A DNA stretch of 64,000 bases from Hemiscyllium ocellatum (Eukaryota). The translations under genes were made by a program, and so were the position numbers. Below the pieces are notes generated by a model. That model had not been told where the DNA came from and did not search any database. It was given only the letters and a program-made list of their open reading frames with translations. Within the stretch, counting starts at the first letter, position 1, and the number at the start of each line of letters is the position of its first letter. Location: assembly GCF_020745735.1 (NCBI RefSeq), contig NW_026868127.1, positions 1 to 64,000 on the forward strand, read 5' to 3'. Positions 12,446-63,149 of the stretch are shown piece after piece.

Positions 12446-12584
12446 ATTGCCCCCTCTATTCTCCCCTTCCTGCTCCATACCTGGGGGTGGGGTGGAGCTT
12501 TTCACTTCATACACCTATCCCTGAGGCTTCAGCTCGGGCCATTCCCAAAGCACACACAGAGACAGAGACTGAATCTTCTTCATC

Positions 12585-12590
12585 TTTATT
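12585..12590 (-). terminator. polyadenylation signal AATAAA of cluster 1 transcript
   Basis: TTTATT on plus, ~490 nt past the C1 stop, followed by a GT-rich tract; conserved at 62925-62930 in cluster 2. Confidence 0.7.
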
Positions 12591-13081
12591 CCCTTTTCCA
12601 GATTGACATTGACAGAAAACAGTCAGCAATTAACAGCCCAGACAGAGGAAGCTGCTCAAATTCACAGCCACAATGGAGCTTGAGGAAAACACTTGTGGAG
12701 AATTTCTCAATAACATGAGAATCCTGTCCCTTTAAACAGTGACAAAACCTTAAATTGGAACTGGCGGCTGAGCAGAAAGGAGGTCTGTTTTACTGAAACA
12801 GAGACTTTTGAGGTTCACATTGTTTTTGCACAGCTGACAGTCTTTAGCACTGTCCCCATCAAACACATCCAGGTCAGGGAATGCATGGGACTAGATAAAG
12901 AGTAAAGTTTTCTCTACACTATCCCAACAACCAGCCTTAACCCCTGAAGCTCAGAAGTATCTCCAAGCCAGTCCTGAGAAGGAAGAGAGTTGAAATTCAG
13001 TGCTGAAAATGACCTTTGACCTGCCAGCTCAGCACTGTTCTATTTAAAGTTGTGTCTCCTCTGTGGACTGTCTCAAACACT

Positions 13082-13410
13082 CTACACACATTCTGATCTC
13101 CTGATGCTCTTGCTGAGGGGAGAGGGGAGTGTCACATGGGTGAGGGCACAGGAGAAGTGAGCGTTGGACTCCCAGTCAGACCCAGAGAGGGTCAGCAGGC
13201 TGCTGACACTGTAGGTGCTGTCCGAAGCTCGCAGGTAGTTGCTGGTCTGAACCCCGTCCGAAATGACTGCACCGTCCTTCTTCCACTGCACCTCCAGCTC
13301 ATCGGGATAGAAGTGATTGGCAAGGCATACCAGGGTGGCAGTGCCCTTGGCATTGACCTGCTCCGGGGAGGGGGGCAGCAGGGTCAGCTTGGGCTGAGAG
13401 TTGTCACGGA
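13082..13410 (-). CDS. IGKC: Ig light chain kappa-type (NS4/type III-like) constant exon C1
   Basis: tctttcag acceptor, phase 1; (I)RDNSQPKLTLLPPSPEQVNAKGTATLVCLANHFYPDELEVQWKKDG...ESNAHFSCALTHVTLPSPLSKSIRRSECV*; C1-set Cys/Trp/Cys and penultimate interchain Cys. Confidence 0.97.
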
Positions 13411-14037
13411 CTGAAAGACAAGAGAAACAATTTTAATCCCTGCCTTTTGAAGGTACATAGACTCTCTGAACATTAACTGCTAAAACGTTTGAACATTTGT
13501 ACCCAGTACCTAGCAGACCTGACAAAGCACTGGCATTTTAAACATTGCTTTTTAGGACGTGTATGGCACTGGCAGAGCCAGTCGCTGCCCATCCCTAACT
13601 GTCTCTGAGAAGGTGATGGTGACGCAGCAGAAAGATAAGGGACAGTCCGTGACCACCATTTGAGGAATGAATGTGGGCAGCTGGAAGGGCTATCAATGTG
13701 GGAGCATTTTAGTGACAGTGATCGGAACTCAGTGAGATTGAGAATAGGGATGGAAATGGAGAACCGTGGAGCAAGTGTAAAAGTTTTGATTTGGGAACAA
13801 TCCATTTTACCAAACTGTGTGGTAATTTGATAAAAGAGCACTGGAACCATCGCCTTGATGGGAGATCAGTGACAGGGCAGTGGGAGGTCTCCAAGGATGA
13901 GACAGGCACAGAGATCATTCAGAATCTTTTCCCAAAAGAGTAAGAGTGACACTCCCAAAGAGAGAGTCTCGGCAAAGATGTGAAACTATCGATATGATGT
14001 GGAGGCTCTGGTGTCCAACTGGGGTGGACATGTTCAG

Positions 14038-14205
14038 GAGTCACATGACACCAGGTTCCAGTCCAACAGGTTTATTTAAAATCACGAGCTTGTGAGACGC
14101 TGCTCCATCTTCAGGTGAAGTGACTTCAGTGCTGAAGGAACAGAGCTCTGAAAGCTTGTGATTTGAAATTAGTCTGTTGGACTATAACTTGGTGTCGTGT
14201 GACTT
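14038..14205. repeat. hairpin (inverted repeat, ~54 bp arms), MITE-like or Penelope-terminus-derived
   Basis: gagtcacatgacaccaggttccagtccaacagg...gagctt versus aagcttgtgatttgaaattagtctgttggactataacttggtgtcgtgtgactt. Confidence 0.75.
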
Positions 14206-14224
14206 CTGACCTCAAATGAAGCCC

Positions 14225-14700
14225 CGTTAGAGCACAATGAGAGAACTGTGTGCAGTTCTGGTCACCATATTGCAGGAAGGATGTGATCCCCCGAGAGATG
14301 GGGACAGTGGAGGATTTTGTCAGGAATGAGGAGTATTAGCTTTGAGGAATGATTGGTTTGGCTGGGACTGGTTTCTTTGGAACACAGGAGGCTGAGGGGA
14401 GAGTTGATCGATGGTGTGTAAAATGATGAGGGGTCTGGATAGAGTGGGTAGGAAGAACTGATTTCCATCAGCACAGAGGGCAATAACCATGGAGAGAGAT
14501 GGAAATGAATTGGGGGCAGGGTTCGAGGGGAGTTGAGGAGTAATTGTTTCACCCAGTGGCTGGTGGGGTCAGGACCTCACTAGCTGAAAGGGTGAGAGCG
14601 GCAGAAACCCTCATCACATTGAAAAAAACACCTGGATATTCACTTGAAACACCAAAGCCTCCAGAGCTATGGAGCAAGAGCTGGTATGTGGGGTGGAGTT
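14225..14700 (+). mobile_element. CR1-type LINE 3' fragment
   Basis: tgtgtgcagttctggtcaccatattgcaggaaggatgtg (CVQFWSPYCRKDV). Confidence 0.75.
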
Positions 14701-60300: not shown

Positions 60301-60984
60301 GGAAACTCAATTTATAAGACCATAAGACCATAAGACATAGGAGTGGAAGTAAGGCCATTCGGCCCATCGAGTCCACTCCGCCATTCACTCATGGCTGATG
60401 GGCATTTCAACTCCACTTACCAGCGTTCTCCCCGCAGCCCTTAATTCCTCGAGACAACAAGAATCTATCAATCTCGGCCTTGAAGACATTTACCTGGATT
60501 TGTGACATCATTTTTCTCCCTTACTCGAAATGTTTCGTGCATTTAGACACAAAGTCTTTAAGTTTGATCTATTATTGATTTCCCTGCACTTTTATGATCC
60601 CTTTGATATTCAAAACTCCTGTCCCTTCCTTTTATTTTCTGGTAACAATCAATCCCATCACTAACTACAATCCTACCTTCTCCTTTCCCTTCCGTTTTCT
60701 CAATTTCCATCCAACTGAACCAAATTACTTTCTCTTTGGGTTGAGTTCAGGACAATATTTATCCTTGAACCAAAATCATGAAGAATGCTCTTTGATCTCA
60801 TTGCTTCCAGTGGGATCTTGCTGTGTAGAAATTGTCTGCCCATTCCTGAAATTGCAAAATTGACTGGTTTTCAAACAAAATGTAAATGTTTTGGGAGAGC
60901 CTGAGGTGCTGAGGGCTTGACTGAAACACAATTAGAGTCACAATTAGAAACAGACTCTTTGATCTGACTCATCCATGCCAGCCA

Positions 60985-61490
60985 CAGAGACATAGAGTCA
61001 TAGAGTCAGAGAGATGTACTGCACAGAAACAGACCCTTCTGTCCAACTCATCTATGCCGACCAGATAAACTAAATTAATCTAGTCCCATTTGTCAGCATT
61101 TGGCCCATATCCTTCACTCTGAGCAAAATATCTTCTTGTTTCATTTGATCAATGCCCCTCATGATGTTAGAAACCTCGATATGGTCATCCCTCAGCCTCC
61201 AGCGATCCAGGGAAAATAGCCTCAGCCTATTCAGCCTCTCCTGATCGCACAAACCCTCCAACTTGGCAACATCCTTGGAAATCTTTTCTGAACCATTTTA
61301 ATGTTCCCAACAATGTTCCTAAAGCAGGAAGGCCAGAATTCCACACAGTATTCCAAAAGGGGCCAAACTGATGTCCTGTACAGGTGCAACAGCTCCCAAC
61401 TCCAATACTCAATGCATTGCCCAATAAAGGAAAGCATGCCAAATGACTTCGTCACCCCCCTACCTACCTGCAACTCCACTTTCAAGGAAC
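60985..61490 (-). mobile_element. CR1-type LINE 3' fragment
   Basis: LLEYCVEFWPSCFR; RLNRLRLFSLDRWRLRDD. Confidence 0.85.
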
Positions 61491-62075
61491 TAATCTTTTT
61501 TGGGATGAATTGGGAGTCTTTCAGTTGTACTTTTCCTAAGCACCCTGTTCAGAAACAAACTTCTTGCTTTCACTCGCAACTAAAAATCAGATAAAGGAGG
61601 TGATGATTTAATGGTACTATTGCTGAGCTGTTCATCCAGAGATCCAGATTAATGTTCTGGGGGCCAGGGTTAGAATCCTGCCGCAGCAGATGGTGGAATG
61701 TGAATTCAATTTTTAAAATCTGCAATTAAGAGTCTAATGATGACCATGAAACAATTGTTGATTGTCAGGAAAAAAACATCTGATTCCCTGATGTCCTTTA
61801 GGGAAGGAAACTGCCATCCTCACCATGTGACTCCAGACCCACAGCGATGTGGTTGACTCTAAATTGCCCTCTGGGTGATTAGGGATGGGCAATGAATGCT
61901 GATCCTAGCAGTGACACTCACATCCCAAGAAGCAATTTGAACAATGCCTGTTCTTTACTGGGGTTTGTTAGGTATTGGCTACAAATGTTCAAATGGATTG
62001 TCTTGCCAGTGAATGTTCAGAGAGTTAAAATCCCTTCGAATAACAGGGATTAAAATTGTTTCTCTTGTCTTTCAG

Positions 62076-62404
62076 GTGGTGACAACTCTCAGCCCAAGCT
62101 GACCCTGCTGCCCCCCTCCCCGGAGCAGGTCAATGCCAAGGGCACTGCCACCCTGGTGTGCCTTGCCAATCACTTCTATCCCGATGAGCTGGAGGTGCAG
62201 TGGAAGAAGGACGGTGCAGTCATTTCAGACGGGGTTCAGACCAGCAACTACCTGCGAGCTTCGGACAGCACCTACAGTGTCAGCAGCCTGCTGACCCTCT
62301 CTGGGTCTGACTGGGAGTCCGACGCTCGCTTCTCCTGTGCCCTCACCCACGTGACCCTCCCCTCTCCCCTCAGCAAGAGCATCAGGAGATCAGAATGTGT
62401 GTAG
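62076..62404 (+). CDS. IGKC: Ig light chain kappa-type constant exon C2
   Basis: tctttcag acceptor; (S)GDNSQPKLTLLPPSPEQVNAKGTATLVCLANHFYPDELEVQW...ESDARFSCALTHVTLPSPLSKSIRRSECV*. Confidence 0.97.
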
Positions 62405-62924
62405 AGTATCGGAGACAGTCCACAGAGGAGACACAACTTTAAATAGAACAGGGCTGAGCTGGCAGGACAAAGGTCATTGTCAGCACTGAATTTCAACTCT
62501 CTTCCTTCTCAGGACCGGCTCAGAGACATTTCTGAGGTTCAGGGGTTATGGCATGTCATTGGGACAGAGTAGACAGAGCTTTACGCTGTGTCAAACCCCA
62601 TGCTGTCCCTGTTCTGGGAGTGTTTGATGGGGACAGAGTTGACTTGAGATGCCAAGTAAAATCTCTTGAAGTTGCTAAAGAGCTGTACAAAGCAATGTGA
62701 ACCTCAGAAGTCTCTGTTTCAGTAAACCAGATCTCCTTCCTGCTCAGTCGCCAGTTCCAATTTAAGGTTTTGTCACTGTTTGAAGGGACAGGGTTCTCGT
62801 GCTATTGAGAAAACCTCCACAAGTGTTTTCCTCAAGCTCCATTGTGGCTGTGAATTTGAGCAGCTTCCTCTGTCTGGGCTGTTAATTGCTGACTGTTTTC
62901 TGTCAATGTCAATCTGGAAAAGGG

Positions 62925-62930
62925 AATAAA
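62925..62930 (+). terminator. polyadenylation signal AATAAA of cluster 2
   Basis: ~520 nt after the stop, GT-rich downstream element, conserved with cluster 1. Confidence 0.7.
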
Positions 62931-63149
62931 GATGAAGAAGATTCAGTCTCTGTGTCTGTGTGCTTTGGAGATTGACCACTCCATTCAGCTGATTGGCTAC
63001 ATTTCAGCATGGCATTGTCACAATTGGCTATTCGCCTGTCAATCAATGACACATCCGTTGTAGAGGATACTGACAGCCAATCATCAATCACTTTCAAATG
63101 ATCCCTTTGATCTGGAATCATTGGAGGTTACAAGATTCCAAACAGATTT

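What the first reader, a model, noticed from the sequence alone, without database searches (positions are those of the whole stretch)
12545..62970. Giant inverted duplication with islands of near-identity: signature of arm-to-arm gene conversion
Collinear inverted homology links 12.5-30.6 kb with 46.8-63.0 kb, including shared old LINE insertions (15700-21000 versus 57740-60300; 30090-30650 versus 46775-47300) that look ~70-80% identical. In contrast, hand counts give leader intron 3/186 differences, J 0/35, and C exon 9/329 with only 4 synonymous. Identity falls to ~70% within ~30 bp upstream of the C acceptor. Protein-level selection alone cannot conserve an intron and silent sites, so recent sequence exchange restricted to Ig modules is inferred, analogous to palindrome-arm conversion. 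The high neutral divergence also argues against a false haplotype duplication.
Basis: partly seen in the sequence, partly recalled or inferred. Interest (0 to 1): 0.75.

Follow-up and report, generated by a model that had tools for sequence, protein, structure and literature searches.

The report
Mosaic inverted pair of shark kappa genes
Two head-to-head copies of a shark antibody light-chain gene come from a very old duplication, yet short stretches of them (promoter, leader intron, J, constant exon and a few non-coding blocks) were made alike again much later; this is ordinary copy-correction within a large gene family, not a special exchange between the two arms.

Summary
Window 12545-30622 and 46788-62968 are collinear inverted arms.

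The species is probably the epaulette shark. A bamboo-shark contig (L001) is the orthologue of arm A: 93% identical to A, 84-86% to B. So the duplication predates the split of those genera.

In the V-J spacer, A groups with L001, and an (A,B) clade is rejected (AU p=0.0014). In the near-identity islands, A, B and L001 collapse to a star. Constraint calibrated on a distant cluster (L006) predicts 3-18 times more A-B differences than seen. Later homogenisation is therefore supported.

Three parts of the interpretation fail:
- The V exon was not converted (dS 0.15, the same as background).
- The islands are not limited to Ig modules.
- The islands are shared with other clusters of another genus, the C module is multi-copy in three species, and the A-B age in the islands is about the genus split. 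The process looks family-wide and fairly old, not palindrome-like.

The "LINE" label is unverified. This scan noted similar kappa pairs and C-kappa conversion on other DNA of this genome.

The parts
12545..30622 (-). Arm A: a complete kappa V-J-C cluster on the minus strand, plus about 6 kb upstream of V
   Evidence: Collinear inverted HSPs to arm B. The orthologous Chiloscyllium contig L001 is 92.95% identical over A 26473-23431.
46788..62968 (+). Arm B: the paralogous kappa V-J-C cluster on the plus strand, head-to-head with arm A
   Evidence: Its V and C translate 100% identical to the Hemiscyllium ocellatum kappa chains P0004 and P0005.
30623..46787 (.). Central spacer of about 16 kb with no arm-to-arm homology; decayed repeats
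   Evidence: No collinear HSP. The only Pfam hit is Exo_endo_phos at 40031-40600 on the minus strand.
24411..24797 (-). Arm A promoter-leader-intron island: octamer-like 24752-24759, TATA-like 24705-24713, leader exon 24597-24645, 186-bp leader intron 24411-24596
   Evidence: A-B differ at 6/365 bases. Site patterns and split spectrum show the deep branches erased. Constraint alone predicts 20.5 differences.
52500..52886 (+). Arm B promoter-leader-intron island: leader exon 52652-52700, intron 52701-52886
   Evidence: Coordinates mapped through the three-way alignment.
24112..24410 (-). Arm A V exon, not homogenised; 12-spacer RSS at 24084-24111
   Evidence: dS is 0.154 for A-B and 0.045 for A-L001. 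CDR differences follow orthology. RSS located.
52887..53211 (+). Arm B V exon (52887-53183) and its 12-spacer RSS (53184-53211)
23599..23675 (-). Arm A J-RSS with 23-bp spacer (23637-23675) and J segment (23599-23636)
   Evidence: A-B differ at 1/77 bases, against 5/77 for A-L001.
53648..53725 (+). Arm B J-RSS and J segment
23150..23420 (-). Arm A J-proximal intronic island containing a (CAG)n run; arm B counterpart at about 53907-54172
   Evidence: A-B differ at 1/267 bases and A-L006 at 44/268. Also kept in the paralogous contig L002. Constraint alone predicts 18.3 differences.
21528..21677 (-). Arm A island in the J-C intron; arm B counterpart 57409-57558
   Evidence: 96-97% identity in 100-bp windows, against 69-84% on either side. 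No orthologue data were available.
15262..21000 (-). Arm A copy of the shared old J-C intron block, interrupted by later insertions at about 16922-19354 and 19511-20425
   Evidence: Collinear with B 60904-57725 at p 0.20-0.26. Absent from outgroup cluster L006 at the same site. No RT or EN domain found.
57725..60904 (+). Arm B copy of the shared old J-C intron block
13082..13410 (-). Arm A C-kappa exon, stop codon included
   Evidence: 9/329 differences from arm B, dS 0.052, dN 0.012. High summed contig depth in three species.
62076..62404 (+). Arm B C-kappa exon
12545..13081 (-). Arm A 3' UTR: mosaic, with AATAAA at 12585-12590. Homology to arm B ends about 40 bp after it. The distal island is 12545-12750.
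   Evidence: Over 12710-12561, A-B differ at 3/150 bases and A-L006 at 40/150.
62405..62968 (+). Arm B 3' UTR, with AATAAA at 62925-62930
26314..26489 (-). Arm A upstream island 1; arm B counterpart 50473-50648
   Evidence: Over the 160 bases also covered by L001 (A 26314-26473), A-B differ by 2.5% while each differs from L001 by 5.6%. Also low against L003.
29851..30050 (-). Arm A upstream island 2, enhancer-like according to earlier notes; arm B counterpart 47314-47511
   Evidence: 94-98% identity. Over 30010-29861, A-B differ at 2/150 bases and A-L006 at 31/150.

Best explanation
The window holds two intact-looking kappa (NS4/type III) V-J-C light-chain clusters of a hemiscylliid shark, probably Hemiscyllium ocellatum. 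They lie head-to-head, as the arms of an ancient inverted duplication that predates the Hemiscyllium/Chiloscyllium split.

On this old backbone, short tracts of about 100-450 bp were made alike again long after the duplication. These tracts are the promoter with leader and leader intron, the J segment with its RSS, a J-proximal intron block, the C exon with parts of the 3' UTR, and two upstream non-coding blocks. The likely mechanism is non-allelic (interlocus) gene conversion among members of the large kappa cluster family, helped by weak to moderate purifying selection on these regulatory and processing elements.

The V exon, and above all its CDRs, was left out or protected by selection for diversity. 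The last homogenisation of A and B dates to roughly the time of the genus split. There is no sign that the exchange is specific to the two arms.

Shown here: the age of the duplication, the mosaic, the collapse of deep branches in the islands, and the failure of constraint alone to explain them. Inferred: conversion as the molecular mechanism, the donors, and the timing.
For: Gene anatomy:
- Leader, 186-bp intron, V with a 12-spacer RSS, J with a 23-spacer RSS 475 bp downstream, and a single C exon with AATAAA.
- This is the same layout as nurse-shark NS4 genes, which have a 186-bp leader intron and a V-J gap of about 500 bp (PMC2193156).
- The nearest proteins are hemiscylliid kappa chains.

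Age of the duplication:
- L001 is 92.95% identical to arm A but 84-86% to arm B.
- Background site patterns are AL|B 198, AB|L 73, BL|A 44.
- The V-J spacer tree joins (A,L001) with support 100/99.6, and an (A,B) clade is rejected (AU p=0.0014).

Homogenisation in the islands:
- A, B and L001 form an unresolved star there.
- The (A,L001) split has 8 sites in the spacer and 0 in the leader island. The B terminal branch has 10 and 1. The A and L001 terminal branches barely change.
- Fisher tests on site patterns give p=0.006 for the leader core and 2.7e-5 for the pooled islands.
- Constraint calibrated on the distant cluster L006 predicts many more A-B differences than are seen: 20.5 against 6 (leader island), 18.3 against 1 (J-proximal island), 17.5 against 3 (distal 3' UTR), 13.1 against 2 (upstream island) and 9.2 against 4 silent (C exon). 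The p values run from 2e-7 to 0.05.

V exon spared: dS for A-B is 0.154, equal to the background.

Family-wide character:
- The leader island and the J-proximal island are nearly invariant in the other Chiloscyllium contigs that cover them (L001-L005 for the leader island, L002 for the J-proximal island).
- The C module 12522-13483 has hundreds to thousands of times the summed contig depth of the unique flank in three organisms.
- C domains are 96-100% identical among clusters whose V domains are only about 70-90% identical.
Against: - The islands were picked because A and B agree there, which biases tests that count A-B mismatches. The outgroup-calibrated tests survive a rough 100-fold correction, except for the C exon.
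- A GENECONV-style permutation test for the A-B pair is weak (p=0.04-0.10), because the islands hold few variable sites.
- The Chiloscyllium contigs come from a short-read draft. Within near-identical islands they may be chimeras of paralogues, which would inflate their private changes.
- No orthologue of arm B and no other cluster of the window's own species could be fetched as DNA. So donors, direction and species-level grouping are untested.
- Only one candidate genus-wide fixed difference was visible in the C module (A 12625).
- Some constraint is certainly present. The leader peptide is identical from epaulette shark to nurse shark.
Confidence: 0.6

Rival explanations
1. Purifying selection only. 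The islands are regulatory or RNA-processing elements (promoter, intronic and upstream enhancers, RSS, polyadenylation region) that evolve slowly in every cluster, and no sequence was ever copied between clusters.
For: - The same islands are conserved in five clusters of another genus, and no genus-diagnostic site occurs in 365 bases.
- The leader peptide and C domain are conserved out to nurse shark.
- Arms A and B carry fewer private changes in the leader island (3 and 1) than the roughly 8 expected at the neutral rate.
- Earlier notes of this scan describe the upstream block as enhancer-like in other clusters.
- The GENECONV-style test is weak.
Against: - One rate factor cannot fit all branches. 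In the islands the (A,L001) internal branch and the B branch vanish (1 site against 18 in the spacer), while the A and L001 terminal branches stay near their spacer counts. Even allowing four-fold constraint, p is about 0.02.
- The long-term rate of the islands measured against L006 is 0.33-0.80 of the silent rate. That predicts 3-18 times more A-B differences than observed.
- The distal 3' UTR island differs at 27% of bases (40/150) from L006 yet at only 3/150 between A and B.
- Silent sites of the C exon (dS 0.052) are three times less diverged than those of the V exon (0.154).
Confidence: 0.15
2. One reading: ongoing or recent exchange specifically between the two arms of this inverted pair, promoted by their inverted orientation, as in Y-chromosome palindromes.
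For: - In the pooled islands A-B (11 differences) is about half of A-L001 (23) and B-L001 (21).
- A-B is the smallest distance in every island window.
- The H. ocellatum arms have fewer private changes than the Chiloscyllium contigs.
- The inverted orientation allows conversion without rearrangement (established knowledge, not tested here).
Against: - No site unites A and B against the rest in the leader island, and the island tree leaves A, B and L001 unresolved.
- L001's branch is 1.66 times A's even in neutral DNA. So the 2:1 ratio is not significantly more than expected.
- The arms as a whole are 74-90% identical, not above 99%.
- At 13 or more listed sites of the C region, arm A has a private letter while arm B carries the majority letter of all contigs in three species.
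- The islands and the C module are shared with many other clusters.
- C-exon dS between A and B (0.052) is no younger than the genus split (0.045).
Confidence: 0.15
3. Assembly artefact: a falsely duplicated haplotype or a mis-joined inverted contig.
For: None found. Ig cluster families are hard to assemble in general.
Against: - The arms differ by 10-26% outside the islands and carry different insertions.
- Arm A has an orthologue in another genus that is clearly closer to A than to B.
- A contig of an independent run of the same organism label covers the unique flank A 13425-13598 with 4 differences.
Confidence: 0.02

Closest known systems
Nurse-shark NS4 (type III, kappa) light-chain clusters (Lee et al. 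2000, PMC2193156)
   Same: Many V-J-C mini-loci. A 186-bp leader intron and about 0.5 kb between V and J. Family members are very close in sequence. Germline-joined members exist, and locus L006 is one.
   Different: That work cloned 2-3 kb V-J fragments. It did not describe head-to-head pairs, J-C introns, C flanks or block-wise histories, and the passages of the paper I searched make no claim of conversion between clusters.
Concerted evolution or interlocus gene conversion in immune multigene families. Examples are the UrIg2 C-domain exons homogenised within nurse and epaulette shark (PMC12227049), and MHC and Ig constant genes (general knowledge).
   Same: Short tracts are homogenised on an older duplication. 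The antigen-binding parts are spared. Introns and silent sites are included.
   Different: Here the homogenised blocks do not group by species; they collapse to a star at about the genus split. Several of the blocks are non-coding and far from any exon.
Palindromes with arm-to-arm conversion, as on the human Y chromosome (own knowledge, not checked here)
   Same: Inverted arms around a unique spacer. The orientation permits intrachromosomal conversion.
   Different: Palindrome arms are kept above 99.9% identical along their whole length by ongoing exchange. Here only about 10% of the arm is near-identical, the rest is 74-90%, and the exchange is not shown to be specific to the pair or ongoing.
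The large inverted duplication of the human IGK V region, proximal and distal copies (own knowledge, not checked here)
   Same: A kappa locus organised as a large inverted duplication.
   Different: The human duplication is young, nearly uniform and holds V genes only. This one duplicates whole V-J-C units and is old and mosaic.

Membership tests
Cartilaginous-fish kappa (NS4/type III) V-J-C cluster | Split leader with an intron of about 186 bp, followed by a V exon | tested here: met
   Leader exon 24597-24645, intron 24411-24596 (186 bp) and V exon 24112-24410, with the same parts in arm B. The 186-bp figure is from PMC2193156.
Cartilaginous-fish kappa (NS4/type III) V-J-C cluster | V with a 12-spacer RSS and J with a 23-spacer RSS about 0.5 kb downstream, one J and one C exon per cluster | tested here: met
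   Heptamer-12-nonamer at 24084-24111 and nonamer-23-heptamer at 23637-23675. V end to J start is 475 bp. One C exon lies 10 kb (arm A) or 8.3 kb (arm B) downstream.
Cartilaginous-fish kappa (NS4/type III) V-J-C cluster | Sequence kinship to known shark kappa chains | tested here: met
   Arm B's V and C are 100% identical to H. ocellatum 'immunoglobulin kappa light chain-like' proteins. V is 85-89% and C 93% identical to a nurse-shark chain.
Interlocus gene conversion / concerted evolution | Neighbouring blocks of the same genes give conflicting trees or ages | tested here: met
   In the spacer, (A,L001) has support 100/99.6 and (A,B) is rejected (AU p=0.0014). In the islands A, B and L001 form a star. 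Site patterns differ with p=0.006 to 2.7e-5.
Interlocus gene conversion / concerted evolution | Intron and silent sites are homogenised beyond what constraint explains | tested here: met
   Outgroup-calibrated expectation against observation: 20.5 vs 6, 18.3 vs 1, 17.5 vs 3, 13.1 vs 2, and C-exon silent 9.2 vs 4.
Interlocus gene conversion / concerted evolution | Paralogues within a species are closer than orthologues between species in the converted blocks (grouping by species) | tested here: inconclusive
   In the pooled islands A-B is 11, against 23 for A-L001 and 21 for B-L001. But there is no shared derived A+B site and no genus-diagnostic site in the leader island. One candidate genus-wide site lies in the 3' UTR (A 12625).
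Interlocus gene conversion / concerted evolution | Significant fragments in a GENECONV-type permutation test | tested here: inconclusive
   The best A-B fragments give p=0.04 (24243-24134) and p=0.10 (24717-24417).
Palindrome maintained by arm-to-arm conversion | Inverted arms around a spacer | tested here: met
   Arms 12545-30622 and 46788-62968 with a spacer of about 16 kb.
Palindrome maintained by arm-to-arm conversion | Near-identity (above 99%) along the whole arm | tested here: not met
   Substitution distance outside the islands is 0.06-0.26, and large parts cannot be aligned.
Palindrome maintained by arm-to-arm conversion | Exchange specific to the two arms | tested here: inconclusive
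   The islands are shared with clusters of another genus, and the C module is multi-copy. Other clusters of the same genome could not be fetched.
LINE retrotransposon (the label given to the shared blocks) | Reverse-transcriptase or endonuclease coding remnant, or membership of a repeat family | tested here: not met
   No Pfam hit in nine ORFs of the blocks and one ORF in a later insertion within arm A's block. Only short scattered matches elsewhere. Decayed elements could escape this test.

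The most novel reading that the evidence does not exclude
Homogenisation came as a pulse, not a steady process. Near the Hemiscyllium/Chiloscyllium split, the promoter-leader-intron, J, intronic, upstream and C modules of a whole kappa subfamily were reset to one sequence across many clusters, while V exons and spacers kept much older histories. Since then each copy has drifted almost freely. 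That would point to a module-wise 'cassette replacement' mode of Ig cluster evolution. The head-to-head pair might then be the repeating unit of the locus, since another such pair is noted elsewhere in this genome.
Probability: 0.2. Interest if true: 0.55.

Novelty: new member of a known kind. Interest (0 to 1): 0.38.

Why it matters
Shark antibody genes are scattered mini-loci, and how dozens of them stay functional while their V regions diversify is an old question. This pair, with an orthologue in a sister genus, is a clean dated example. Regulatory, J and C modules are corrected between copies, while V exons are left to diverge. It also flags five non-coding blocks as candidate control elements, and it warns that the ages of duplicates in this family cannot be read from exons or introns near them. 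The mechanism itself, interlocus conversion plus selection, is textbook, and this scan has seen it repeatedly in this genome.

Tried and rejected
- **DNA from chromosome-scale assemblies.** I tried to fetch other kappa clusters from the Hemiscyllium and Chiloscyllium assemblies. So there is no arm-B orthologue and no other cluster of the same species.
- **C-exon contigs by protein search.** The search returned only shark-like Ig fragments filed under bacterial assemblies.
- **Reads laid on the C region.** Only short Logan contigs were available, paralogues were mixed, and 85 of 125 differences were not listed. A full three-species site-pattern test of the C exon was therefore impossible. Depth is reported only as 'multi-copy', not as a copy number.
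- **Pfam on 40 ORFs** of the shared blocks, the spacer and the flanks. There was one endonuclease hit in the spacer and nothing in the 'LINE' blocks.
- **ARAGORN** found no tRNA-like head in the SINE copies.
- **His/Arg variant of the C domain** (arm A shares His with two Chiloscyllium clusters). I considered it as a marker of trans-species C-exon lineages and rejected it, because it is a CpG transition (CGC/CAC) and may recur.
- **Absence of genus-diagnostic sites as proof of purifying selection.** I rejected this: it only excludes continued family-wide homogenisation after the split.
- **Literature searches**. No paper in the searchable library describes conversion between shark kappa clusters or head-to-head kappa pairs.

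Full report
**What is there**

The window has no gaps. Self-comparison gives a chain of collinear inverted matches linking 12545-30622 with 62968-46788. Each arm holds one complete-looking immunoglobulin light-chain cluster, and a protein scan finds only two V and two C exons in the window.

Arm A lies on the minus strand:
- octamer-like and TATA-like motifs at 24752-24759 and 24705-24713
- leader exon 24597-24645
- 186-bp leader intron 24411-24596
- V exon 24112-24410
- 12-spacer RSS 24084-24111
- 23-spacer RSS 23637-23675
- J segment 23599-23636
- C exon 13082-13410
- AATAAA at 12585-12590

Arm B is the mirror image on the plus strand: leader 52652-52700, V 52887-53183, J 53688-53725, C 62076-62404 and AATAAA at 62925-62930. 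The genes face away from each other across about 28 kb. Arm homology stops about 40 bp after each AATAAA.

The layout matches nurse-shark NS4 (type III/kappa) genes, with the same 186-bp leader intron and about 0.5 kb between V and J (PMC2193156). The closest proteins are hemiscylliid kappa chains. Arm B's V and C are 100% identical to two Hemiscyllium ocellatum proteins, so the window is probably epaulette shark. Earlier notes of this scan inferred the same species.

**Check of the observation**

- leader intron 3/186
- J 0/38
- C exon 9/329 with 4 silent differences
- 32 identical bases before the C acceptor, then 72-79% identity

Identity along the arms swings from about 50% to 100%. The background is itself two-tiered. 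It is p 0.10-0.16 near V, but p 0.20-0.26 (K2P 0.23-0.32) in the shared J-C intron block. This is not a CpG effect, and I cannot explain the difference.

The 'LINE' label is not confirmed. There is no RT or EN domain in the ORFs of these blocks, and no repeat family is visible. However, a distant Chiloscyllium cluster (L006) lacks the block at exactly the place where both arms have it.

**Age of the duplication**

A 3-kb contig of the older Chiloscyllium punctatum assembly (L001) is 92.95% identical to arm A over 26473-23431, but only 84-86% identical to arm B.
- In non-island DNA the three-way site patterns are AL|B 198, AB|L 73 and BL|A 44.
- A maximum-likelihood tree of the V-J spacer joins A with L001 (100/99.6), and an AU test rejects an (A,B) clade (p=0.0014).

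L001 is therefore the orthologue of arm A. The inverted duplication is several times older than the split of the two genera. This removes the haplotype-artefact rival.

**What happened in the islands**

In the promoter-leader-intron island plus J/RSS, the same tree method leaves A, B and L001 as an unresolved star with very short branches.

The split spectrum is the clearest result, with six sequences in 277 spacer columns and six or seven in 319-364 island columns:

| Branch or split | V-J spacer (277 columns) | Leader island (319-364 columns) |
|---|---|---|
| (A,L001) shared sites | 8 | 0 |
| B-only sites | 10 | 1 |
| A-only sites | 3 | 2-3 |
| L001-only sites | 7 | 5-6 |

So the old branches are erased while the young ones are nearly intact. 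That is what copying does, and a uniform slowdown does not (Fisher p=0.006 for the leader core, 2.7e-5 for the pooled islands).

A second test does not depend on L001. It uses the distant cluster L006 to measure the long-term rate of each island relative to silent V sites (0.33-0.80). It then predicts the A-B difference expected from constraint alone:

| Island | Predicted | Observed |
|---|---|---|
| Leader island | 20.5 | 6 |
| J-proximal intron island | 18.3 | 1 |
| Distal 3' UTR island | 17.5 | 3 |
| Upstream island 30010-29861 | 13.1 | 2 |
| C exon, silent differences | 9.2 | 4 |

The p values run from 2e-7 to 0.05. Because the islands were chosen for low A-B divergence, these values need a correction of about 100-fold. 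All but the C exon survive it.

1. *The V exon was not homogenised.* Its silent divergence between the arms is 0.154, the same as the surrounding DNA, against 0.045 between A and its orthologue. The CDR differences follow orthology.
2. *The islands are not confined to Ig modules.* Five of them are non-coding (26314-26489, 29851-30050, 23150-23420, 21528-21677 and the distal 3' UTR).
3. *The signal is not specific to the pair.*
   - The leader island is nearly invariant in all five Chiloscyllium contigs, whose spacers differ by up to 22%. The J-proximal island is kept in L002.
   - Contigs of three organisms pile up hundreds- to thousands-fold over 12522-13483 relative to the unique flank.
   - C domains are 96-100% identical among clusters with very different V domains.
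   - At 13 or more listed sites in the C region, arm A has a private letter while arm B has the majority letter of all runs.
   - No site unites A and B against the rest in the leader island, and a GENECONV-style permutation test gives only p=0.04-0.10 for the pair.
4. *The exchange is not recent.* Island distances between A and B (1.6-2.5%) and C-exon dS (0.052) match the cross-genus orthologue distance (2.5-6%; dS 0.045). In the pooled islands A-B is about half of A-L001 (11 against 23). But L001's branch is 1.66 times A's even in neutral DNA, and the draft contigs may be paralogue chimeras. A post-split exchange is therefore neither shown nor excluded.

**Mechanism proposed**

The best fit is an ancient inverted duplication of a whole V-J-C unit. 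Short-tract non-allelic gene conversion among kappa clusters followed, retained where it restores working promoter, leader, RSS/J, intronic, C and 3' UTR sequence. In the V exon it was rejected or never fixed, because diversity is favoured there.

Conversion itself is inferred. Donors and direction are unknown. Some purifying selection is certain: the leader peptide is identical out to nurse shark.

**Comparison and novelty**

This is concerted evolution of an immune multigene family, which is a known kind. Within-species homogenisation of Ig-superfamily exons has already been reported for nurse and epaulette shark UrIg2 (PMC12227049). The library I could search holds no description of conversion between shark kappa clusters or of head-to-head kappa pairs. 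This scan has noted another head-to-head kappa pair and a C-kappa conversion tract on other pieces of the same genome.

It resembles Y-type palindromes only in geometry, and it fails their defining whole-arm near-identity. I rate it a new member of a known kind, of moderate interest.

Noticed in passing
L006:10180-10620: The distant Chiloscyllium punctatum kappa cluster (scaffold BEZZ01000502.1, protein P0030) has V and J already fused in frame in the germline, with no RSS. The whole V-J-C unit spans only 4.4 kb. Germline-joined genes of this kind are known from nurse shark (PMC2193156).
   Followed up: partly
L001:2780-2800 (aligned to window 23637-23650): The Chiloscyllium orthologue of arm A has two changed bases in its J-RSS heptamer and two more at the start of J. 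Arms A and B keep the consensus heptamer. That J may be disabled, or the draft contig may be imperfect.
   Followed up: no
window 25379-24800: Here the A-L001 distance rises to 8.6% and A, B, L001 and L003 become roughly equidistant. Orthology is blurred in a stretch that is not an island. An unsampled donor cluster is one possible cause.
   Followed up: partly
window 15262-21000 and 57725-60904, compared with 22693-26064: Non-island divergence between the arms is about twice as high in the distal J-C intron block (p 0.20-0.26) as around V (p 0.10-0.16), and this is not due to CpG sites. An older, larger homogenisation around V is one possible cause.
   Followed up: partly
window 50891-51248: Arm B has a purine-rich (GA-type) insertion of about 360 bp, absent from arm A and from L001. 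The upstream edge of the leader island also sits at a (GA)n run (52462-52497).
   Followed up: no
window 13408-13410 versus 62076-62078: The first three bases of the C exon differ, so the J-C junction reads Ile-Arg in arm A and Ser-Gly in arm B. At 13410 arm A's letter is private, and contigs of all three organisms carry arm B's letter.
   Followed up: partly
window 6809-7114, 18442-18750, 21036-21371, 39428-39718, 45562-45865, 56201-56460, 56874-57181: There are at least seven copies of one SINE-like repeat of about 300 bp (74-94% alike), inserted independently in the two arms. ARAGORN sees no tRNA in them.
   Followed up: partly
window 1684-2291, 26880-28107, 30790-31681, 37345-38581, 54781-56008, 61148-61492; also L003:9286-10794: A second multi-copy repeat (64-86% alike), probably a LINE tail, sits at non-collinear places in the two arms. 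These are independent insertions. An AP-endonuclease remnant lies at 40031-40600 on the minus strand.
   Followed up: partly
proteins P0061, P0062: Ig C-domain proteins 79-83% identical to this shark C-kappa exon are filed under Aeromonas veronii and Salmonella enterica, on contigs of 507 and 990 bp. Vertebrate DNA has probably contaminated those bacterial assemblies.
   Followed up: no
window 12625: In the distal 3' UTR island, both arms and about 96% of the contig depth of the window's organism label read A. Nearly all contigs of the two other organisms read T. This is a candidate family-wide, genus-level fixed difference, and the only one visible in the truncated table.
   Followed up: partly
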